A stretch of DNA of 64,000 nt from the IMG/VR virus record IMGVR_UViG_3300046167_000825, positions 62,001 to 126,000 of that record; one strand, 5' to 3'. Of the stretch, positions 5,331-51,905 are shown piece by piece. The notes below the pieces were generated by a model, which was not told the DNA's origin, did not search any database, and saw nothing but the letters and a program-made list of their open reading frames with translations. The first letter of the stretch is position 1, and every line of letters starts with the position of its first letter. The position numbers were made by a program, and so were the translations under genes.

Positions 5331-6341
5331 ATGTCTTTAGACGAGAAGATTAAAACGATTTTGAAAGAGTTGGGTGTGGATGTTTTTTTCCACACAGATC
5401 CTAAAACAAATACCACCGTTGGCAGTTTCGTATTGCCAAAGGAAAAAGCGAAAAAACAAACAAAGGATAACTTAATGTATGACTTAAAACTGAATGACAA
5501 ATATCTCATCCCTATCGAGAAGGGTCAAGCCGTAGGAAAGGGTTGGAAATCACGTTCTGGTTATAAACCAATGGGTGTCACATGGCATTGGACTGCTGGA
5601 TGGGATTTAGAACGAGGTTGTTCTAAGATTCTTGGTGGTGCTAACGCTTCTCGGAAAGGAAAGGCATCTGCTCACTTTGGTGTGGGTCGTTCTTTTGATG
5701 AAGGGATTGATAGATATGTCACCATCGAAAACCGTTCGTGGCACGCTGGTGCGAATCAGACACTTCGTTGGGATGGCAAGCCTTGTGTTATCAATGGTGT
5801 TCGATACAGTGGTGCTTCCTACTGTATTGGAATCGAAACTGTGAATGTAGGCTATGCTCGTAAAGGTGTGAAAGCCAAAGAGGATTGGAGTGAGTGTGCT
5901 TCAGCCAATGGGACAGAGTACAAGATACAGCCTTGGACAGAAGAACAGATTGAAATGATGATTGCTCTAGGGAAACATATCCAAGAGAAATGGAGTCATC
6001 TCACTTGGGAAGACCACCATGATCATCAAGATTTATGTGCTGGTTATAAGACAGACAGTATTGGTTTTCCTTTCGCTCGTGTTCTCAGAGGTGTTTATAA
6101 CGACCCTTCCATCCCAGATGTGTGGTCACCCTTCCTCACAAATGAACAACGCCAACAAGCCCTCATCGATCTAGGTTATGACTTGGGTAAATGGGGTGCA
6201 GATGGCGATTGGGGTCGTATGTCCGACTCGGCTCTACGGGATTTCCAAGAGTTACACGGAATGGTTGAAAACGGTATGTGGACGACTTTCGTGTCCAAAA
6301 AAGTTTATACTGCACTAGAGGAAAAGGGGTTGAAGAAGTAG
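5331..6341 (+). CDS. Endolysin: N-acetylmuramoyl-L-alanine amidase (Amidase_2) with C-terminal peptidoglycan-binding domain
   Basis: TWHWTAG, ASAHFGV, RSWHAG, IGIETVN and HDH motifs. C-terminal LGYDLGKWGADGDWG...ALRDFQELHG is PG_binding_1-like. Confidence 0.85.
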   Translation: MSLDEKIKTILKELGVDVFFHTDPKTNTTVGSFVLPKEKAKKQTKDNLMYDLKLNDKYLIPIEKGQAVGKGWKSRSGYKPMGVTWHWTAGWDLERGCSKILGGANASRKGKASAHFGVGRSFDEGIDRYVTIENRSWHAGANQTLRWDGKPCVINGVRYSGASYCIGIETVNVGYARKGVKAKEDWSECASANGTEYKIQPWTEEQIEMMIALGKHIQEKWSHLTWEDHHDHQDLCAGYKTDSIGFPFARVLRGVYNDPSIPDVWSPFLTNEQRQQALIDLGYDLGKWGADGDWGRMSDSALRDFQELHGMVENGMWTTFVSKKVYTALEEKGLKK

Positions 6342-6355
6342 GGTCTTTTCGTATA
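6327..6355 (+). promoter_or_regulatory. Variant of the bipartite promoter motif (GGGTTG-N15-TTCGTATA)
   Basis: Same spacing as the consensus, about 32 nt before ATG 6388. Confidence 0.45.
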
Positions 6356-7955: not shown

Positions 7956-8325
7956 GGAGATTCTTGAGACAAACAGTATCCCAGCCTTCTCTGAAAGACG
8001 TTTGAACGCCAAACATCGTAAAGGTATTTTGGTGAAGACCCCAGCCACACAAAAAACGACCACAGAGACCGTTGTGGTGGATAAGCCTAGAACACCCGTA
8101 AAGAGTGTGGAAGAAGCCCTAGAACTCACCACAGCCCCCACAGAAGTTGTAGAAGAAGTTGTAGAAGAAGTTGTTGCTGTTGAGACCGAGGCTAGTGAAG
8201 AAACCGTAGATTTGGAGTCTTTGACGAAGAAGCAACTAATTGAAGTGGCGAAGGTAGAAAAGGTGACTTACAAGAATCTGACCAAAGCCGAGTTGTTGGA
8301 AGCACTTTATATTGTAATGGCATAA
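7870..8325 (+). CDS. Protein with C-terminal Rho_N/HeH-like nucleic-acid-binding domain
   Basis: DLESLTKKQLIEVAK...NLTKAELLEAL. Confidence 0.6.
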   Translation: MYLPKITNNQNKNKATKTLPKLAQPSKSREILETNSIPAFSERRLNAKHRKGILVKTPATQKTTTETVVVDKPRTPVKSVEEALELTTAPTEVVEEVVEEVVAVETEASEETVDLESLTKKQLIEVAKVEKVTYKNLTKAELLEALYIVMA

Positions 8326-8336
8326 GGGGGGCGACT

Positions 8337-8900
8337 ATGAGTGATAAGAATAGATTTGGTGGTTTGAACCCAAAGGGCTTATATGTTCCTATGTCAGATG
8401 TTGAGCAAGAAACCTTAATGGTGCTTTCCCAACGTCAAGCCTTCCGTGTTCATATCGTGGATTGGGGTTGGCACAACGCCCCCCAGATTATTGTGGGTGA
8501 TCATCGTCTTTCGATCCAGTTCACGATGACCTTCAATAAGCCCGAAGTCCCACAGCCGTGCTATTACTTTGATTTACAGTTGTATGCTGCGGGCATTAAA
8601 GTATTTCAAGAGAGGCAAGCATTGGTGTATGGAGGGCAACCTCAAATGATAGGGGCTGGCTTACAAATAACACTCGCTTGGGATATTGCTATTGCACATA
8701 TTGATCCTAAACTTGTGAAAGCAGTCACGGGTGCGACTGGTCTGACTTCTCGATTGCAAGATAAAGACACGGGTGCTATGACACTATTCGGGAATATGTC
8801 CTTGTCAAACTCCGACCGAGAAGCGATGGTGAAGATGCGTCACTCTGAAAGCCTCATCCGTTTGGATAATCAGAACTCCGTGAAAAAGTTTAAGAAATAA
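8337..8900 (+). CDS. Hypothetical protein
   Basis: 187 aa ORF with purine-rich RBS. Confidence 0.65.
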   Translation: MSDKNRFGGLNPKGLYVPMSDVEQETLMVLSQRQAFRVHIVDWGWHNAPQIIVGDHRLSIQFTMTFNKPEVPQPCYYFDLQLYAAGIKVFQERQALVYGGQPQMIGAGLQITLAWDIAIAHIDPKLVKAVTGATGLTSRLQDKDTGAMTLFGNMSLSNSDREAMVKMRHSESLIRLDNQNSVKKFKK

Positions 8901-8913
8901 ACTTTGCCATTTG

Positions 8914-8942
8914 GGATCGTTTCCAAACTCAACCTCCGTATA
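8914..8942 (+). promoter_or_regulatory. Bipartite promoter motif GGATCG-N15-TCCGTATA
   Basis: Exact consensus, 33 nt before ATG 8976. Confidence 0.75.
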
Positions 8943-8975
8943 TAAAACAGACCAGTTATATACGGAGGTTTTTTT
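8931..8975 (+). terminator. 15-bp perfect inverted repeat plus U-tract that contains the promoter -10 element and the downstream RBS
   Basis: aacctccgtatataa (8931-8945) / ttatatacggaggtt (8956-8970), followed by T-run. Confidence 0.75.
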
Positions 8976-9851
8976 ATGTCAAATGTTTTGCACACCCCAG
9001 AGTCACACTCTGAACACCCCGACTTTGAGGAGTATCTCTCCATTCTTTTGTTGGAAGAGGAGATATCAGTAAATAATGTTTCTGAGAGAATCCAAGAACT
9101 TATAAAGCCAGCAACCCTATCCAAATCAATGGAACAAACAATCACAACACAAGTTAACAGAAGGCTAATTGAACTAGCCATACCAACCCCCCCACCAAAG
9201 GAACAAAGCACTATGCCTACAACCCAATTTTTGAACCAAATGGATAAAGGATGTTTATATGCCACCGAACTCTTGGATAACAATGAGAACGCTGTCTATG
9301 ATATTTTAACCTTCGTGAAAAGGGTTTCCAACCGAAAACGAGGAGGCAAAATCCGAGTCCCCTCAAAGGTTCGTGAAACTCTATTGCCGATTTCAAACTC
9401 CCCCACCACCTTCAGTTCTTTCCTTGTATCTCTTTTAACTCATTGCTTATGTCAGATAACGGCAGAAGACCTCAATGCGACTTACCAGTTTGTGACGGGT
9501 CGAAAACACAACTATTCTAAGCCTCGTCAAGTCCTAGAACATGCAGAGAAAACACACTGGAAGGACACAGAGATTATCTTTCGTGGCGATTTGGATGAGA
9601 TGGCAGCAGAGGTCGGGGTATTCTTTGATGAACCTACGGATCTCACTGAACCTACGGATCTCCACCAAACCGTCCGAGACTTGTTGGGTATGGTGGAGAA
9701 ACAATCCAAACAAATACAATACTTGTCAAGCATTGTATTGGCTAACCAACAAGCCCCCAATGAGGACAACAAGGTTTCTTTCTCTATGGATAAAGAGGAA
9801 CTCCTTCAATATCTCATTCAAAACAACAAACTCAATTTAACCATCAACTAG
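8976..9851 (+). CDS. Hypothetical protein
   Basis: GGAGG RBS, 291 aa. Confidence 0.65.
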   Translation: MSNVLHTPESHSEHPDFEEYLSILLLEEEISVNNVSERIQELIKPATLSKSMEQTITTQVNRRLIELAIPTPPPKEQSTMPTTQFLNQMDKGCLYATELLDNNENAVYDILTFVKRVSNRKRGGKIRVPSKVRETLLPISNSPTTFSSFLVSLLTHCLCQITAEDLNATYQFVTGRKHNYSKPRQVLEHAEKTHWKDTEIIFRGDLDEMAAEVGVFFDEPTDLTEPTDLHQTVRDLLGMVEKQSKQIQYLSSIVLANQQAPNEDNKVSFSMDKEELLQYLIQNNKLNLTIN

Positions 9852-9860
9852 GAGTACAAC

Positions 9861-10598
9861 ATGTCTAAGTACATTCCATCCATCAGCCCCTTAACCGAAA
9901 GCAAACTTCCCCACACAAAATGGGTTGCTGAGGTGCTTCCTTTCCTTACTGAGTCCGAAGAAGAAATCTGTTTTTCAAAGAAGCAAGAGCAAGTTCTCCT
10001 CTCAGCAGTCACGGGTGATAAAGATAATCTCCCTCAAGCCCAAAGTTTATTCAAAGGGTTGGGATTAAGTAAAAAATATAGAGGATACCTCTTTTCTTAT
10101 CTCACACTCAAAGCCTCAAAGACACTCGGACACCTTGTATCGATCCGTGACATCATGTTGGCATACAAGGCTATCTGTGGTAATGCTTGTCACCCCGACT
10201 ACCCCTTACTGGTGGCGAACTATGGTGGCTTCTATGTCATGCCAACGAATGCTTCCACAGTGTATGAAGCCAACAGCACAAGCCTTGCAGAAGACCATGT
10301 GCAGAATGTGACGGAGTTGCTTATGTCTGTCACGAAGTCAAAAAGAAAATCTTATGACACCAGCAATCTCCAAACACTTGAAGAGTTGGAAGTGACAAAC
10401 AAGACATTGGAAAAGAAGGACATGGAGTTTGTGTTCCAGTTCGCTCATAACAATGATCTTCTGAGAGAATTAATGACCGAACTTCAAGATTCCACTCCCG
10501 ATGTAGACCTTCAACGGTCGGTGGATTTATTCGCTCAGAACTCTATGATGTACGATTTCTTTTCTTTCATGCGAGAGAAGGGTATCTCTATTGCATAA
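9861..10598 (+). CDS. Hypothetical protein
   Basis: AGGAG RBS, 245 aa. Confidence 0.65.
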   Translation: MSKYIPSISPLTESKLPHTKWVAEVLPFLTESEEEICFSKKQEQVLLSAVTGDKDNLPQAQSLFKGLGLSKKYRGYLFSYLTLKASKTLGHLVSIRDIMLAYKAICGNACHPDYPLLVANYGGFYVMPTNASTVYEANSTSLAEDHVQNVTELLMSVTKSKRKSYDTSNLQTLEELEVTNKTLEKKDMEFVFQFAHNNDLLRELMTELQDSTPDVDLQRSVDLFAQNSMMYDFFSFMREKGISIA

Positions 10599-10622
10599 AC
10601 ATTGACTAGACGATTTTCCAAC

Positions 10623-10656
10623 AGCCTCCCGTCAATTCTGTGGGAGGCTTTTTTTT
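10623..10656 (+). terminator. Intrinsic terminator
   Basis: agcctccc / gggaggct stem followed by T-run. Confidence 0.7.
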
Positions 10657-10667
10657 AGAGGTATGAA

Positions 10668-11249
10668 ATGAAGATATTGTGGTTTGACCTAGAAACAACT
10701 GGCTTAGACAAAGACACCAACACCATCCTTGAGATAGGGATTGTCGTTACGGACATGGAGGGGAATGTTTTGAGTGCTTGGGACACCAAGATTAAACCCA
10801 CACCCAACGACATAGCACGGGCATCAAAACGAGCCTTGGAGATTAACGGCTACACCACAAAAGGGTGGGAGGATGCTCCAACTCCAGAGGAAATTGCCCC
10901 CATCATTCGTGAGAAGTTCAATGGGAAATATATTCTCGGTGGTCATAATGTCGCTCACTTTGACGTACCCTTTCTGAAAGCGTGGTTGAAGAAACACAAC
11001 CAAGACCCCAACATTGGATATAGATTTTTAGACACCATGAGTACGGCAGTCGAACATCTTTTCCCTTGTGGGCTGAAATCAGCCTCCCTTGTCAATATCC
11101 GAAAGGCATTGAATATTGAAACGGGGAAAGCACACACTGCTCTTGCTGACACACTCGCTTGTGCTGAGGCATACCGTCAAATGGCTCGTTCCTCTCTTAT
11201 CAAACGACTATGGTGGTCGTATGTCATCCCCAAGAGGATGAAGCAATAA
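10668..11249 (+). CDS. DEDDh 3'-5' exonuclease (DnaQ-like)
   Basis: FDLETTGL (ExoI), GHNVAHFDVPFL (ExoII), HTALADT (ExoIII). Confidence 0.9.
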   Translation: MKILWFDLETTGLDKDTNTILEIGIVVTDMEGNVLSAWDTKIKPTPNDIARASKRALEINGYTTKGWEDAPTPEEIAPIIREKFNGKYILGGHNVAHFDVPFLKAWLKKHNQDPNIGYRFLDTMSTAVEHLFPCGLKSASLVNIRKALNIETGKAHTALADTLACAEAYRQMARSSLIKRLWWSYVIPKRMKQ

Positions 11250-12732: not shown

Positions 12733-14771
12733 TATATGAAACAACCCCCAGACCCCCTTCGGATAGAAAAGGGTTTACGATAACATCCTTGAAAGACCTC
12801 TTTCATTTGGTTGATAAATACCCAACCAAAGAACCGTATATCATTGCTTGGGAATATGTTTTCATGGACTATTCTTGGGTTTGGATACATCCGAGAGTGT
12901 TGAAAGAAAGTAAACACATGCCAGAGTTCTGGATTCAGTTGGAGGACTGGAGAACAAAGGGCAATCTAGTTCGGTCAGATAACAAAAGTTGGGGTGATAA
13001 AAAGAAAAAATATGCCAAATTAACACAGCCCGTTGATGCAAAGAACTCGGAGGCACTTCGTTTTCCGAAGATTCTTGGAAGGGGTGTTCTTTCAATTGCT
13101 TATGGGACTTCACCAGAGAAAGCAGAACTCTTTAAGAAAAAATGTCTTGCTATCATAAAACGCTTTCAAGGGGATGATTCCCTCGCAGATATTAACGATC
13201 TGTACCCCCGAAAGATGAAGGTCACGGTTAGCGTTATCGAAACCTCTGAGAAATGGGTTATCAACTACGCAGAAGGAGTCCTAGAGATCAATGCTAGTGC
13301 GTTCTTGGGGCAGAGCCTTTCAAGGCAACAGATGCTGTTGTTGAGAGGATTCGGTTTGGCTTATTTCTCTTTGAAACTACGCCCGTCTGATATGAAGAAA
13401 TGGTTCAAGTATTACCGAGTCAAAAAACCCATTGCCAACCGTAAGTTCTATCACCCAGACATCACAAAACTTCAGATAAGTTGGGCAAGTGGTTTGGCTG
13501 ACTTCGTGTTGGGTGAAGAAACCTCTGTGATGAAGACCTTCAGAGAGTACTTCCAGAGAACCTCCGTTGGGGCTAGTCGGGTTGACCTCTCTCAGTTCCC
13601 AACTGAAATGGCTAGTTCGGTGATGGCATCTAGTATTGAACTAGCCGAACCCTTCAAAAACACTCCGTTTCAGAACCTTGAAACCAATGATATCCTAGAT
13701 ATTATGGGTTTGAGCGATGCTGCCGTTGCCACTCCCACTTTACTGGGAGGTTTGACGGGTGCTAATAAAGTGGTTGCCACTGACAACACCTTCAGAGATA
13801 TTGTGGCATACTCCATAGAAACCGATGAGGGGGGTAATGCTGAATGGGATCTTGGTGAGGGTAAAGCCGTATCAATTGCTAGAACCATTTGGTACAACAA
13901 GAAGACGGGTGTGTCTGCCATAGAGAATGACCTTTTTGAACTAGATGAGTCTTTTCAAGGGAAAGGTATTGGGGTTCGGATGGTTTCAAATCAGATAGAT
14001 ATGTGTCTAGCGAAGGGCATTCAAAAAATCATGTGCTATGCCGCAAGAGGTGATGATGAATATGTGGGCTACAAGGTGTGGCACAAAATGGGTTATGATG
14101 CCCTCCTAACTCCCAAGAATCTTGATGAGCACTCCGATGATGAAGATGGTTTCTATTGGTGGGTCTTGAAATCCCTAGAAAAGAAAATAAATGAATACCC
14201 CGAAGATATCTTGCACCGAGAAGTGGATCTTCTCTTACAAAAAGCCGTGGGGTCAAAGAAACCCAGTTATTTCAGAAGCCTCCCCACCCCATTCTTTTCT
14301 CGTTATATGAACATTCGCTTTGAAGAACCACCCTTTGCCAATGATTGGTCAGACCTCGTGCCGACTTTATCCAGAGCAGAGATTTTTCAATACTATTCTT
14401 TCTTGAGTGCTCAAATGAGTAAAGGTGACATCGTCAGTTTCAATCTGTTCAAAGACTTAGAACTCAGTATCACGAAAGACACCATACAAAATCTTATGGA
14501 TGTTGAAGGTTTTGAGGATTGGTGGGGTGAGAACGGTGGTGGATATAAAGCCACTCTTGATTTGAGTGAGGGTGTCAATAGCCCCGCTTATATGATTCTC
14601 TCTTTATACCGTCAAAAGAAGGGCTTGACAAAGATGTCCTCAGACGATCTATTGACTAAGGCAATGGGGTATCTTTCATCGAAAGACATCGCCCTCTTTG
14701 ATGAGGCTCGGAGAGAACTCCGTGTGGCTTCAAAATCTGTTTCTCGCATCGCCACTCTTTGGCTTGCATAA
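12729..14771 (+). CDS. GNAT-like domain protein, paralogue 2
   Basis: FELDESFQGKGIG, GYKVWHKMGYDA, LMDVEGFEDWW...ATLDLS. ATG 12729 overlaps the upstream TGA. Confidence 0.6.
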   Translation: MIYETTPRPPSDRKGFTITSLKDLFHLVDKYPTKEPYIIAWEYVFMDYSWVWIHPRVLKESKHMPEFWIQLEDWRTKGNLVRSDNKSWGDKKKKYAKLTQPVDAKNSEALRFPKILGRGVLSIAYGTSPEKAELFKKKCLAIIKRFQGDDSLADINDLYPRKMKVTVSVIETSEKWVINYAEGVLEINASAFLGQSLSRQQMLLLRGFGLAYFSLKLRPSDMKKWFKYYRVKKPIANRKFYHPDITKLQISWASGLADFVLGEETSVMKTFREYFQRTSVGASRVDLSQFPTEMASSVMASSIELAEPFKNTPFQNLETNDILDIMGLSDAAVATPTLLGGLTGANKVVATDNTFRDIVAYSIETDEGGNAEWDLGEGKAVSIARTIWYNKKTGVSAIENDLFELDESFQGKGIGVRMVSNQIDMCLAKGIQKIMCYAARGDDEYVGYKVWHKMGYDALLTPKNLDEHSDDEDGFYWWVLKSLEKKINEYPEDILHREVDLLLQKAVGSKKPSYFRSLPTPFFSRYMNIRFEEPPFANDWSDLVPTLSRAEIFQYYSFLSAQMSKGDIVSFNLFKDLELSITKDTIQNLMDVEGFEDWWGENGGGYKATLDLSEGVNSPAYMILSLYRQKKGLTKMSSDDLLTKAMGYLSSKDIALFDEARRELRVASKSVSRIATLWLA

Positions 14772-14818
14772 TTTATCTATATCTCTATTTATGTGATGAC
14801 TTTTATTAGGAGTATTCT

Positions 14819-28225: not shown

Positions 28226-28285
28226 CAGATTTTTGGAAAAAACTAGATGAGGCTTTCGCCTATATCTTTCAAACAAAGAAGAAAA

Positions 28286-29980
28286 ATGACAATACTAAAA
28301 TTAATGAAAGGCGATTGCCTCGAAAAAATGAAGAACCTTGAAAGTTCTTCTGTCCCCTCTATCTTATGCGACCCACCTTACGGCTTGGAGTTCATCACTG
28401 AACTAGAAGGGAAATCACGGAACTTGATGAACCCCACTAGCGAAGCAGATATCAAACGGAAAGAAGACTATGGGAACTCGTACGCTGGGCGTGCCTCCAA
28501 CCTTCCCGATTTGGGTAAGTTCGGACAGTATGGGAAAGGGGTACAAGAGTGGCACAAGGGTTGGGTTGGGGCTTGTCATAGGGTATTGTCAGAAGACGGC
28601 TCGTTGATGGCTTTCAATTCCAGCAAGACCTCTCACCGAATGATAGCCGCTATGGTCGAACTAGGGTTTCACATTTCTATTGATGCTTGGGTATATCTGT
28701 CTGGGATGCCCAAAGCACGAGACTTAGGGGCTGGTGTAGGTTGGTATACAAACTTGAAGCCCTCTTATGAACCTATCATTGTGTGCCGAAAACAAAAAGG
28801 AGAAACTATGCACAAATCACATTTAATTTATATCGGACGGAAGCCTTTGAGCGAGAGGAACATCGCAGAGAATGTTTTGAAGCACGGGACGGGTGCGATG
28901 AACATTGATGCTTGTCGAATAGGTGACGAGGAGCGAACTTACACGGGAAGTGGTGAATCTCAAATGAGATACAATGACGACCGTGCTGGTTTGGCAGATG
29001 GGAGAGGAAAAGAACTTGAGTTCACGGTAAAAGGTCGATGGCCCGCAAACTCTATCTTCTCTAGTTCATGTGCCAAGATTCTTACAAAGCAGATTGGGGC
29101 AGAGGCTTCCACTTATTTTTTCATTTCTGAGGATCGTTTTGATAACCACAATTCGTATAACAACAACAAGGAGAACACTATGAATGTACCATCAGATTTA
29201 TTAGACTATTTACACACGATGATTACCCCCACACATGTGGGAGGGGAAAGTCTCATCATCCAAGAGGGCTTGAACGATCACGACTTCAGCCAATACACCG
29301 ACAATCAATGGCACGGTTGTATCGCTGTTGGAACACCGACAGAGGAAACAAGCAAGGAACTTATGAGAGTCATGAAGGCTGGTGCTCATTTGATGTTGAT
29401 AGCCCCCGAAGAAGAACCCACTGGTTATAAGGGTGCTTGTCAGATTGAGGACACGGGATTTGAAATCAGAGATTCTATATTTTGGGCGAGAGAAACCGAC
29501 CCAGAGAATCCCAACTTCATGTACATGCCAAAGGCTTCACGGAGTGAGAGAGAACTAGGCACAGAGCATTTGAAAAAAGTCAGTGGTGCTGAAGCCGTTG
29601 ATCGGAAAGAAGGTTCTGCTGGGATGGACAACCCCCGTGCTGGTGCTGGTAGAACAGCCACAGAGATTGGTAATTTTCATCCGACTGTCAAGCCCATTGG
29701 GATTATGGAATGGTTGGCTCGTGATGTACCAAAAGGTGCGACAGTTCTAGACCCATTTATGGGTTCTGGCACTATGGGTATCGCTTGTGTGAAGACGGGA
29801 CACTCTTATATAGGCACAGAGATTGACGAGAGTTACTTCCCTATTGCAGATGCTCGTATCCGTCATTGGAATGAAACCTATTGTGCTTGGGATAGTGCTG
29901 AGGTCATTTCTGACCTAGATGAGGAAGAGACAGAGGATGTCCTAGCCCCTATCGACTTGAACAGTTTCTTGGGTTTTTAG
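28286..29980 (+). CDS. Beta-class N4/N6 DNA methyltransferase: N module (N3) + middle module + C module
   Basis: CDPPY, YLSGMPK, IGRKPL...NIDACRI...GRWPAN, HPTVKP, DPFMGSG. In-frame AAGGAG+ATG at 28808 and 29180. Confidence 0.85.
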   Translation: MTILKLMKGDCLEKMKNLESSSVPSILCDPPYGLEFITELEGKSRNLMNPTSEADIKRKEDYGNSYAGRASNLPDLGKFGQYGKGVQEWHKGWVGACHRVLSEDGSLMAFNSSKTSHRMIAAMVELGFHISIDAWVYLSGMPKARDLGAGVGWYTNLKPSYEPIIVCRKQKGETMHKSHLIYIGRKPLSERNIAENVLKHGTGAMNIDACRIGDEERTYTGSGESQMRYNDDRAGLADGRGKELEFTVKGRWPANSIFSSSCAKILTKQIGAEASTYFFISEDRFDNHNSYNNNKENTMNVPSDLLDYLHTMITPTHVGGESLIIQEGLNDHDFSQYTDNQWHGCIAVGTPTEETSKELMRVMKAGAHLMLIAPEEEPTGYKGACQIEDTGFEIRDSIFWARETDPENPNFMYMPKASRSERELGTEHLKKVSGAEAVDRKEGSAGMDNPRAGAGRTATEIGNFHPTVKPIGIMEWLARDVPKGATVLDPFMGSGTMGIACVKTGHSYIGTEIDESYFPIADARIRHWNETYCAWDSAEVISDLDEEETEDVLAPIDLNSFLGF

Positions 29981-51746: not shown

Positions 51747-51905
51747 AATGGTTCTCCTTTTTTAGATTAAGAGGGTGTTTCAAAAAATGGGTTTTGAGCA
51801 CACCCATCTTCAGATAAGGGTTTGAAATAAAGTAATTATTGGTCTGAGATAATCTGTCTATATAAGTCGGACGGTAGAATGTGAAGATTATGGAGATGTG
51901 ATACT

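What the first reader, a model, noticed from the sequence alone, without database searches (positions are those of the whole stretch)
8914..8976. Promoter built into a terminator hairpin that also hides the next RBS
Seen: the left arm of a perfect 15-bp inverted repeat contains the -10 element, and the right arm contains the GGAGG RBS of ORF 8976, followed by a U-tract. Inference: transcripts from upstream would terminate or keep the RBS paired, while transcripts from the embedded promoter lack the left arm and are translatable. Established analogy: hairpin occlusion of RBSs on long T4 transcripts.
Basis: partly seen in the sequence, partly recalled or inferred. Interest (0 to 1): 0.6.

Follow-up and report, generated by a model that had tools for sequence, protein, structure and literature searches.

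The report
Promoter, terminator and RBS in one hairpin
In a large uncultivated phage, one 63-base stretch between two genes appears to stop transcription from upstream, start new transcription with a phage-specific promoter, and hide the next gene's ribosome-binding site on any RNA that reads through; the logic is known from phage T4, here in a more compact form with a new promoter type.

Summary
There is a perfect 15-bp inverted repeat (8931-8945 / 8956-8970, 10-nt loop). GGAGG (8964-8968) lies in the right arm, followed by T7 and then ATG 8976.

The promoter is real in the genomic sense, but it is not a sigma-70 TATAAT promoter. It is one of 19 exact copies of GGATCG-N17-CGTATA (0.03 expected) in the 289-kb phage genome. 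These belong to 52 bipartite sites, 50 of which sit 22-76 nt before an SD plus start codon. The phage encodes at least 3 sigma-70-family proteins.

The -10-like CGTATA (8937-8942) lies inside the left arm. Transcripts from this promoter therefore cannot contain that arm; the predicted start is A8949-A8951, in the loop.

Predicted cost of opening the RBS is 20 kcal/mol on long RNA and 4.5 kcal/mol on short RNA. This is the largest difference among 41 promoters of this phage, and 8 of the 41 show the same logic.

The hairpin is one of 29 strong terminator-like hairpins (2.5 expected). Three related lineages keep the promoter boxes, lower stem, T7 and ATG invariant and keep the hairpin stable.

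No RNA data could be obtained, so the transcript start, termination and translation effects remain inferred. I rate it a new variant of a known kind (T4 gene e type control plus PeSL-type promoter/terminator cassettes).

The parts
8337..8900 (+). Upstream ORF (187 aa, unknown function), last gene of the upstream transcription unit; stop TAA at 8898-8900
   Evidence: syntenic homologues in L010-L015
8913..8919 (+). -35-like box GGGATCG of the class A phage promoter
   Evidence: GGGATCG is found in 18 gene-upstream regions versus 2.0 expected. It lies exactly 24 nt before the C of CGTATA, as in all 19 class A sites. Invariant in relatives.
8920..8936 (+). 17-nt promoter spacer; its 3' end (8931-8936) is already in the left arm
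   Evidence: Fixed 17-nt spacing in 19 of 19 class A sites
8937..8942 (+). -10-like box CGTATA (extended consensus TCCGTATA, 8935-8942), inside the left arm
   Evidence: TCCGTATA is found upstream of 31 genes versus 2.3 expected. 50 of 52 bipartite sites are followed by SD plus start within 22-76 nt. Invariant in relatives.
8931..8945 (+). Left (5') arm of the hairpin; contains the anti-SD CCUCC (8933-8937) and the -10 box
   Evidence: invariant in three lineages
8946..8955 (+). Loop; predicted transcription start at A8949-A8951 (inferred from sigma-70-family geometry and from the shortest leaders of sister promoters)
   Evidence: SD begins 7-9 nt after CGTATA in the shortest class A leaders; the loop is the most variable block in relatives
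8956..8970 (+). Right (3') arm; contains the Shine-Dalgarno GGAGG (8964-8968)
   Evidence: The lower 9 bp are invariant. The upper part varies but hairpin stability is kept at -18.7 to -21.0 kcal/mol.
8969..8975 (+). T7 tract: terminator U-tract and, at the same time, the 7-nt SD-to-AUG spacer
   Evidence: invariant in relatives
8976..9851 (+). ORF of 291 aa (unknown function), first gene of the two-gene unit driven by the embedded promoter
9861..10598 (+). ORF of 245 aa (unknown function), second gene of the unit
   Evidence: syntenic in relatives
10623..10657 (+). Next terminator-like hairpin (10-bp stem, T8), which ends the two-gene unit. Its flank resembles the first cassette but has no promoter boxes, and the SD of the next gene lies after the U-tract.
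6326..6355 (+). Promoter of the upstream unit (GGGGTTG-N17-CGTATA), a source of the 'long' transcripts that reach the hairpin
   Evidence: genome 68350

Best explanation
The 63 bases form a three-in-one regulatory cassette of a large phage that appears to use host RNA polymerase with its own sigma factors.

(1) Read as RNA from upstream, 8931-8975 is an intrinsic terminator: a 15-bp stem followed by U7, 30 nt after the stop codon. It ends the upstream unit.

(2) Read as DNA, 8913-8942 is a phage-specific class A promoter (GGGATCG-N17-CGTATA) whose -10 box is the core of the terminator's 5' arm. RNA made from it starts in the loop (about A8949-A8951). Such RNA lacks the 5' arm, so it cannot form the hairpin and is neither terminated nor occluded.

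(3) The 3' arm carries the SD of ORF 8976, and the U-tract is the SD-AUG spacer. Any transcript that escapes termination keeps the SD locked against the CCUCC of the 5' arm.

Net effect: the ORF 8976 / ORF 9861 unit is expressed only when the class A promoter fires. It is insulated from upstream transcription at both the transcriptional and the translational level.

Shown here: the sequence anatomy, the motif recurrence, the conservation and the predicted energetics. Inferred: the start site, the termination efficiency, the size of the translational effect, and which sigma factor reads the promoter.
For: Promoter. 19 exact GGATCG-N17-CGTATA sites are present (about 0.03 expected), and the backwards-read control pattern gives 0. 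52 of the 87 CGTATA sites carry the G.G.T.G-type box at exactly -24. Of those 52, 43 are non-coding in a genome that is 8.5% non-coding, and 50 precede an SD plus start. Of the 35 CGTATA sites without the box, only 4 are non-coding and 6 precede an SD plus start. At least three sigma-70-family genes are present and no RNA polymerase core domains were found. Sister class A promoters precede the SNF2 helicase and PolA genes of the window.

Terminator. The genome has 29 hairpins with a stem of at least 9 bp followed by at least T5, against 2.5 +/- 1.6 in order-2 Markov genomes. None lies in coding sequence. 19 lie within 60 nt after a co-oriented stop, typically 22-30 nt, and ours lies at 30 nt.

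Occlusion. SD P(unpaired) is 0.000 on long RNA. Opening costs 19.7-20.3 kcal/mol on long RNA against 4.2-4.8 kcal/mol on short RNA. The difference of 15.5 kcal/mol is the highest of 41 promoters. 8 of 41 reach 8 kcal/mol or more, against 4.3% of promoter/RBS chimeras (permutation p < 1e-4). Further sites put the SD or AUG against a 5' arm in or just upstream of the promoter's -10 region: genome 9557, 81179, 185913 and 217597.

Conservation. GGGATCG, the whole left arm, the lower 9 bp, T7 and ATG are invariant in three lineages whose ORF 8976 protein is 77-79% identical. The loop and upper right arm vary, yet hairpin energy stays at -18.7 to -21.0 kcal/mol through a G-U pair and re-registered pairs.

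Precedent. T4 e, soc, 49 and I-TevI (PMC3014915) and PeSL cassettes (PMC2839356).
Against: There is no double-sided covariation. 13 of 15 pairs never vary, one changes to G-U and one to A-C, so the RNA structure is supported by conservation and energy only.

The upstream unit's own promoter (6326-6355) has the same -10 box, so it is not shown that long and short transcripts belong to different times.

Four other terminator hairpins carry the next gene's SD in the 3' arm without a class A or B promoter (genome 4703, 217224, 265113, 276655). An SD in a terminator arm may therefore be partly a by-product of genome compaction.

The 10-nt loop and the A/U-rich upper stem are not those of a textbook strong terminator.

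The host is unknown and the genome is only about 66% complete.
Confidence: 0.65

Rival explanations
1. Compaction only. A real terminator and a real promoter overlap because the intergenic space is 75 nt. The SD sits in the 3' arm because a G-rich arm plus a U-run happens to make a good SD plus spacer. Occlusion has no selected regulatory role, since few transcripts read through.
For: Four other strong terminators have the next start codon 5-9 nt after the stem, with the SD in the arm. Composite promoter/terminator overlaps of other geometries occur at genome 176227, 205778 and 228160. The genome is 91.5% coding.
Against: The promoter/RBS complementarity is specific to the matched pairs genome-wide (matched mean 4.0 versus 2.6 kcal/mol, permutation p < 1e-4), and ours is the extreme case. 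The full 15-bp pairing goes well beyond what a terminator needs. Hairpin stability is kept in relatives by different upper-stem pairings.
Confidence: 0.2
2. DNA-level operator. The 40-bp palindrome is the binding site of a dimeric repressor that sits on the -10 box and controls the class A promoter. RNA structure would then be incidental.
For: Perfect dyad symmetry centred on the promoter's -10 / start region. The palindrome is unique among the 52 promoters.
Against: Relatives break the DNA symmetry in the right arm (an inserted A, a T-to-C change and an A-to-G change) while keeping an RNA hairpin of equal energy, including a G-U pair that exists only in RNA. The U7 tract, the SD and the position 30 nt after a stop codon are explained by the RNA model and not by an operator. 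No sister promoter carries the same half-sites.
Confidence: 0.05
3. RNA processing or stability hairpin (an RNase III-type site, or a 3'-end protector of the upstream mRNA) rather than a terminator, with the promoter as annotated.
For: The stem is long and perfect, and phages such as T7 use intergenic hairpins for processing (my own knowledge).
Against: 15 bp is short for RNase III (my own knowledge). The U7 tract directly after the stem, and the 28 similar hairpin-plus-T-run elements placed after stop codons, fit intrinsic termination.
Confidence: 0.05
4. Antisense small RNA. The minus strand of 8896-8994 encodes a structured sRNA related to the Rfam LOOT motif.
For: Sub-threshold Rfam match: 29.6 bits, E = 0.0054 in a 3-kb search.
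Against: The score is far below the gathering score of 46.4 bits. The match is absent from the whole-window search. There is no promoter motif or U-tract on the minus strand. The match rests mainly on the A-run plus long hairpin.
Confidence: 0.02

Closest known systems
T4 genes e (lysozyme), soc, 49 and I-TevI: a late promoter inside an SD-sequestering hairpin (PMC3014915)
   Same: [quoted passage not shown] Long upstream transcripts pair the SD and are poorly translated (about 100-fold for gene e). Transcripts from the internal promoter lack the 5' strand and are translated.
   Different: Here the promoter is not the gp55-dependent TATAAATA, which occurs 11 times in this genome and only once near a start. 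It is a bipartite GGGATCG-N17-CGTATA motif. The same hairpin is also followed by U7 and looks like an intrinsic terminator. The phage is unrelated to T4: its nearest GenBank relative is an uncultured 485-kb phage at 46% PolA identity.
PeSL (promoter-early stem-loop) composite promoter/terminator cassettes of T4-like phages (PMC2839356, PMC4122927)
   Same: Short intergenic cassettes combine a promoter with a stem-loop that terminates upstream transcription. The stem-loop often lies between -35 and -10 or overlaps the -10, and the SD and start codon follow. Other promoters of this phage have exactly that geometry (genome 176227, 205778, 228160).
   Different: In PeSLs the SD lies 3' of the stem-loop, not inside it, and the promoters are host sigma-70 type. 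Here the stem spans from the -10 box to the SD. No role in recombination was tested.
ECF-type sigma promoters, e.g. B. subtilis sigma-W with a CGTA -10 (PMC5758882)
   Same: A CGT(A)-containing -10 box, close adherence to consensus and a rigid spacer.
   Different: The hallmark AAC of the ECF -35 is absent (GGGATCG / GCGGTTG instead). The phage sigmas score as generic sigma-70 family, the largest being nearest to RpoD/RpoS-type models. This is a resemblance only.
Ordinary Rho-independent terminators
   Same: A G/C-rich lower stem, a U-run, and placement 20-30 nt after a stop codon. That distance keeps the terminating ribosome from suppressing termination (PMC4824070).
   Different: The 5' arm doubles as a promoter -10 box and the 3' arm as an RBS. 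The loop is 10 nt and the upper stem is A/U-rich.

Membership tests
Intrinsic (Rho-independent) terminator | Stable stem-loop with a G/C-rich base, directly followed by a U-run | tested here: met
   15-bp stem, 5 G-C pairs in the lower stem, -19.1 kcal/mol, U7
Intrinsic (Rho-independent) terminator | Intergenic, co-oriented, shortly after a stop codon, and over-represented against chance | tested here: met
   30 nt after TAA. 29 such hairpins in the genome versus 2.5 +/- 1.6 simulated, none in coding sequence.
Intrinsic (Rho-independent) terminator | RNA 3' ends in the U-run | not testable with these tools
Sigma-70-family-dependent promoter (phage class A) | Two conserved boxes at fixed spacing, recurring upstream of genes in the gene's orientation | tested here: met
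   19 exact sites at N17. 52 sites of the wider family, 50 of them followed by an SD plus start at 22-76 nt.
Sigma-70-family-dependent promoter (phage class A) | A sigma factor available to read it | tested here: inconclusive
   Three sigma-70-family ORFs are present. Which one, if any, reads class A is unknown.
Sigma-70-family-dependent promoter (phage class A) | Mapped transcription start 5-9 nt after the -10 box | not testable with these tools
   No RNA data. The start at 8949-8951 is inferred.
T4-type promoter-in-hairpin translational control (e, soc, 49, I-TevI) | SD and/or AUG paired on long transcripts | tested here: met
   Prediction only: P(unpaired SD) 0.000, opening cost 20 kcal/mol
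T4-type promoter-in-hairpin translational control (e, soc, 49, I-TevI) | The internal promoter is placed so that its transcripts lack the 5' strand | tested here: met
   The -10 box (8937-8942) lies inside the 5' arm (8931-8945). Opening cost is 4.2-4.8 kcal/mol for starts at 8944-8955.
T4-type promoter-in-hairpin translational control (e, soc, 49, I-TevI) | T4 late promoter TATAAATA read by gp55 | tested here: not met
   There is no TATAAATA at the site. The motif is not enriched before genes: 11 sites, 1 near a start. So this works like the T4 cases but is not a homologue of them.
PeSL cassettes | A promoter plus a terminator stem-loop in one short intergenic cassette, with the stem-loop overlapping the -10 | tested here: met
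   definition from PMC2839356
PeSL cassettes | Host sigma-70-like consensus, T4-like genome context, SD outside the stem-loop | tested here: not met
   Different boxes, the SD is inside the stem, and the phage is not T4-like
Rfam LOOT RNA (RF03000) | Score at or above the gathering threshold | tested here: not met
   29.6 bits versus 46.4 bits, minus strand; lost in the whole-window search

The most novel reading that the evidence does not exclude
The site is the extreme form of a genome-wide design rule. The phage's own sigma-dependent promoters carry a built-in anti-Shine-Dalgarno (the C/U-rich ...(C)UCC just before CGUAUA, or complementary spacer sequence). Each promoter would then also act, when transcribed from upstream, as a translational silencer of the gene it controls. 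Gene expression would be tied strictly to promoter firing in a genome where read-through is common. At 8913-8975 this has fused with an intrinsic terminator into one 45-nt element with three functions. This would be a previously undescribed insulation strategy in huge phages.
Probability: 0.35. Interest if true: 0.7.

Novelty: new variant of a known kind. Interest (0 to 1): 0.55.

Why it matters
If confirmed, this is a natural and very compact insulator of about 63 bp. It terminates upstream transcription, restarts transcription, and silences read-through translation, all by letting one hairpin arm be a promoter box and the other an RBS.

It extends the T4 gene e principle to an unrelated huge phage with its own sigma factors, and it suggests the principle is used repeatedly in that genome (8 of 41 promoters).

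The work also yields a usable promoter map (classes A, B and C) and a terminator map for a phage lineage with no cultured member. That map makes its temporal programme testable.

The element would also be a ready-made part for synthetic operon design.

Tried and rejected

2. GenBank phages: no DNA match to 8300-9900.

3. IMG/VR relatives of ORF 8976: none found. Relatives of the upstream ORF at 47% identity (L002, L003) have a different downstream gene and no hairpin. An anchored DNA pattern in viral contigs found nothing. The metagenome scan returned only one contig already held and one identical copy.

4. Covariation: only three distinct sequences and no double-sided change, so no covariance model was built.

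5. The nearest named relative, LR745208.1, does not use the promoter motif: 1 chance-level hit in 485 kb against 17 in this genome. The motif's age cannot be traced that way.

6. Function of the regulated genes: Pfam, PHROGs, PDB sequence search and the ESM Atlas gave nothing usable for ORFs 8337, 8976 and 9861.

7. The host sigma-70 consensus scan finds no promoter at the site, and promoter-like sites are no more common than in shuffles (26 versus 29.9). The sigma-70 reading of the '-10' was therefore dropped in favour of the phage motif.

8. Rfam LOOT hit on the minus strand: rejected as chance.

9. T7-like and multisubunit RNA polymerase domains: none found. The T7-like search had a silent control, and the record is about 66% complete.

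10. The GATC inside GGGATCG as a special Dam-type signal: GATC is only moderately depleted (0.43) and is common elsewhere, so this was not pursued.

Full report
**Context**

The window is bases 62001-126000 of a 289,014-bp IMG/VR virus record. CheckV estimates it at 66% complete. It has no DNA match among GenBank phages. By PolA its nearest named relative is the uncultured 485-kb phage LR745208.1 at 46% identity. The finding lies in a + strand gene array that contains an amidase, a KH-domain protein, an endonuclease VII-like protein, a DnaQ-like exonuclease, an SNF2 helicase, a DnaB-like helicase, DNA methylases and PolA.

**1. The observation**

The sequence is as described.
- The left arm is AACCTCCGTATATAA (8931-8945), the loop is AACAGACCAG (8946-8955) and the right arm is TTATATACGGAGGTT (8956-8970). 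The arms are 15 of 15 complementary.
- GGAGG lies at 8964-8968 and T7 at 8969-8975.
- ATG 8976 opens a 291-aa ORF. Relatives keep its N-terminus as protein from the first Met.
- The upstream 187-aa ORF stops at 8898-8900.
- The local fold has z = -4.6 and the hairpin alone is -19.1 kcal/mol.
- By arithmetic, chance would give such a repeat about 0.003 times in this genome.

**2. The promoter is real, but of a phage-specific kind**

A sigma-70 consensus scan finds nothing at the site and no excess of such sites anywhere. A k-mer enrichment test on the 100 nt upstream of 348 crude gene calls gave three strongly enriched words:
- TCCGTATA, 31 observed against 2.3 expected.
- GGGATCG, 18 against 2.0.
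- TGCGGTTG, 13 against 1.2.

Listing all 87 CGTATA sites and aligning them shows that 52 carry a G.G.T.G-type box exactly 24 nt upstream. These fall mainly into two groups:
- Class A, GGATCG, 19 sites.
- Class B, (GC)GGTTG, 30 sites. Many are clustered at genome 143-165 kb before small ORFs and carry an extra downstream CAATCAA.

The exact pattern GGATCG-N17-CGTATA occurs 19 times and never at N16 or N18. About 0.03 is expected, and a backwards-read control gives 0.

Of the 52 sites, 43 lie in the 8.5% of the genome that my gene calls leave non-coding, and 50 are followed by an SD plus a start codon at 22-76 nt. Of the 35 CGTATA sites without the box, only 4 are non-coding and 6 have such a start.

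The site in question has GGGATCG at 8913-8919, a 17-nt spacer and CGTATA at 8937-8942. It is a typical class A copy with 39 nt to the ATG. Sister class A sites precede the SNF2 helicase and PolA genes.

The genome encodes at least three sigma-70-family proteins, and no RNA polymerase core domains were detected. Host polymerase redirected by phage sigmas is therefore the economical reading; this is inference. The CGTA-type -10 with a rigid spacer recalls ECF-type promoters (PMC5758882), but the AAC of the ECF -35 is missing, so that is only a resemblance.

**3. Geometry**

The -10 box sits inside the 5' arm. A promoter does not transcribe its own -10 box, so RNA from this promoter cannot contain the arm, whatever the exact start. 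Two lines of reasoning put the start at about A8949-A8951, inside the loop:
- Sigma-70-family spacing.
- The shortest class A leaders, in which the SD begins 7-9 nt after CGTATA.

**4. The terminator**

A scan for stems of at least 9 bp (G-U allowed, at least 3 G-C pairs, loop 3-12) followed by at least T5 finds 29 in the genome. Order-2 Markov genomes give 2.5 +/- 1.6. None of the 29 is in coding sequence. 19 lie within 60 nt after a co-oriented stop, typically 22-30 nt.

The hairpin here is the second longest and lies 30 nt after the stop. That distance is what ribosome-polymerase coupling studies predict is needed for efficient termination (PMC4824070). The next such hairpin (10623-10657) closes a two-gene unit made of ORF 8976 and ORF 9861.

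**5. RBS occlusion**

Partition-function folding gives these values:
- On RNA starting at 8860 or 8901, the SD has P(unpaired) = 0.000, and opening 8962-8981 costs 19.7-20.3 kcal/mol.
- On RNA starting anywhere from 8944 to 8955, opening costs 4.2-4.8 kcal/mol.

In current thermodynamic models of initiation, a difference of about 15 kcal/mol corresponds to a change of several hundred-fold; that conversion is inference from my own knowledge. The stop codon of the upstream ORF is too far away for a terminating ribosome to melt the stem (inference).

**6. Is this a one-off?**

The same long-minus-short calculation for 41 class A and B promoters puts this site first, at 15.5 kcal/mol.
- The promoters have a median of 2.9 kcal/mol, against 1.0 for 301 control genes.
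- In a swap test, each promoter's upstream half was joined to every other promoter's RBS half. Matched pairs have a mean of 4.0 against 2.6 for mismatched pairs (permutation p < 1e-4; Mann-Whitney p = 0.043).
- 8 of 41 matched pairs reach 8 kcal/mol or more, against 4.3% of chimeras.
- Structures show the same logic at genome 9557, 81179 (window 19179, before the SNF2 helicase), 185913 and 217597. In these the -10 box or the spacer pairs with the SD or AUG.

Only the site at 8931-8975 adds a U7 tract. Other promoters overlap terminators in PeSL-like ways (genome 176227, 205778, 228160).

Conversely, 5 of the 29 strong terminators have the next start codon 5-9 nt after the stem, with the SD in the arm (genome 4703, 70931, 217224, 265113, 276655). 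The four others lack a class A or B promoter. At least three of them are abutted by a third promoter-like motif, class C. This keeps open the rival view that an SD in a terminator arm is partly a result of compaction.

**7. Relatives**

The word search found homologues of ORF 8976 at 77-79% identity. Their contigs are syntenic.

In the aligned intergenic region, several blocks are invariant in all three lineages: GGGATCG, the whole left arm, the lower 9 bp of the stem, T7 and ATG. Most of the variation lies in four places:
- The stretch between the stop codon and the -35 box.
- The spacer, at a few positions.
- The loop, at about half of its positions.
- The upper right arm.

Overall intergenic identity (84-91%) is similar to that of the flanking genes (80-95%). 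The evidence therefore lies in the pattern of change, not in its overall level.

Each lineage still folds into a hairpin of -18.7 to -21.0 kcal/mol. One uses a U-G pair and new pairs recruited from the former loop; another tolerates one A-C mismatch and also recruits new pairs. Formally there is no double-sided covariation.

The invariant left arm beside a drifting right arm fits a left arm under double constraint, as both promoter sequence and pairing partner. The G-U pair and the broken DNA symmetry argue against a DNA operator.

**8. Comparison with known systems**

The mechanism matches T4 genes e, soc, 49 and I-TevI. There a late promoter lies in the DNA for the 5' strand of an SD-sequestering helix, and only the short late transcripts are translated (PMC3014915). 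It also matches the PeSL idea of composite promoter/terminator cassettes whose stem-loop may overlap the -10 box (PMC2839356 and PMC4122927).

It differs in four ways:
- It uses a new bipartite promoter instead of TATAAATA or a sigma-70 consensus.
- It lies in an unrelated huge phage.
- It makes one hairpin serve as terminator, promoter carrier and RBS mask at once.
- It uses the U-tract as the SD-AUG spacer.

I therefore rate it a new variant of a known kind.

**9. Limits**

All functional statements are predictions. The time classes are only guessed from gene content: class B before small ORFs, class A before replication genes, class C before large genes.

The upstream unit's promoter shares the same -10 box. 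The biological reason for insulating the two units from each other is therefore not established.

Noticed in passing
whole genome (G000), including the window: Extreme avoidance of short palindromes, a strong restriction-avoidance signature. Observed versus expected: AGCT 1 / 931, CCGG 0 / 501, GCGC 0 / 166, CGCG 10 / 173, GGCC 43 / 622, ACGT 57 / 726.
   Followed up: partly
about 60 sites genome-wide, e.g. window 14760-14787 and 51841-51868; genome 4678, 265087, 275984, 276629: A third promoter-like motif, class C: (A)ATAAT-N3-T(C/T)TATA(T). It lies very close to the SD, at least 14-17 nt from ATG. At several sites it directly abuts the 5' side of a terminator-like hairpin that holds the next SD, so the promoter would run straight into a terminator. 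This could be an antitermination or attenuation arrangement. It is unexplained.
   Followed up: partly
genome 143000-165000 (outside the window): A dense cluster of class B promoters (TGCGGTTGCA..TTTTTTAAGAGAyCCGTATA..TGTAAGCAATCAA) before small ORFs on both strands. It looks like an early-gene region built from repeated regulatory cassettes.
   Followed up: partly
window 10596-10673: The next intergenic cassette resembles the one studied (TAAAC-TTG-C, CGATTTTCCAAC, CCTCCCGT) but has neither GGGATCG nor CGTATA. It may be a duplicated cassette that lost, or never had, the promoter. It is conserved in L012.
   Followed up: partly
window 29130-29185: A full class A promoter (AGGATCG-N17-CGTATA), followed by AAGGAG and ATG, lies inside the 577-aa methylase ORF 28247-29980. 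This indicates an internal start or two adjacent genes.
   Followed up: no
window 8910-8927: The -35 box sits in a small 7-bp hairpin (UUUGGGA ucgu UUCCAAA) on the + strand RNA. Its pairing is kept with G-U pairs in L012. Significance is unknown.
   Followed up: no
window 8896-8994, minus strand: Sub-threshold Rfam LOOT (RF03000) match at 29.6 bits against a 46.4-bit threshold. It is not recovered in the whole-window search and is judged to be chance.
   Followed up: yes
genome 155283-155906, 191237-191989, 236702-237310: Three sigma-70-family ORFs of 207, 250 and 202 aa. The third matches region 4 only. Which promoter class each one serves is unknown.
   Followed up: partly
L019 (Ga0206677_10000711, 31.7-kb contig): A second metagenome holds a contig identical to the window over the 161-base stretch read here, which spans the whole regulatory region.
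   Followed up: no
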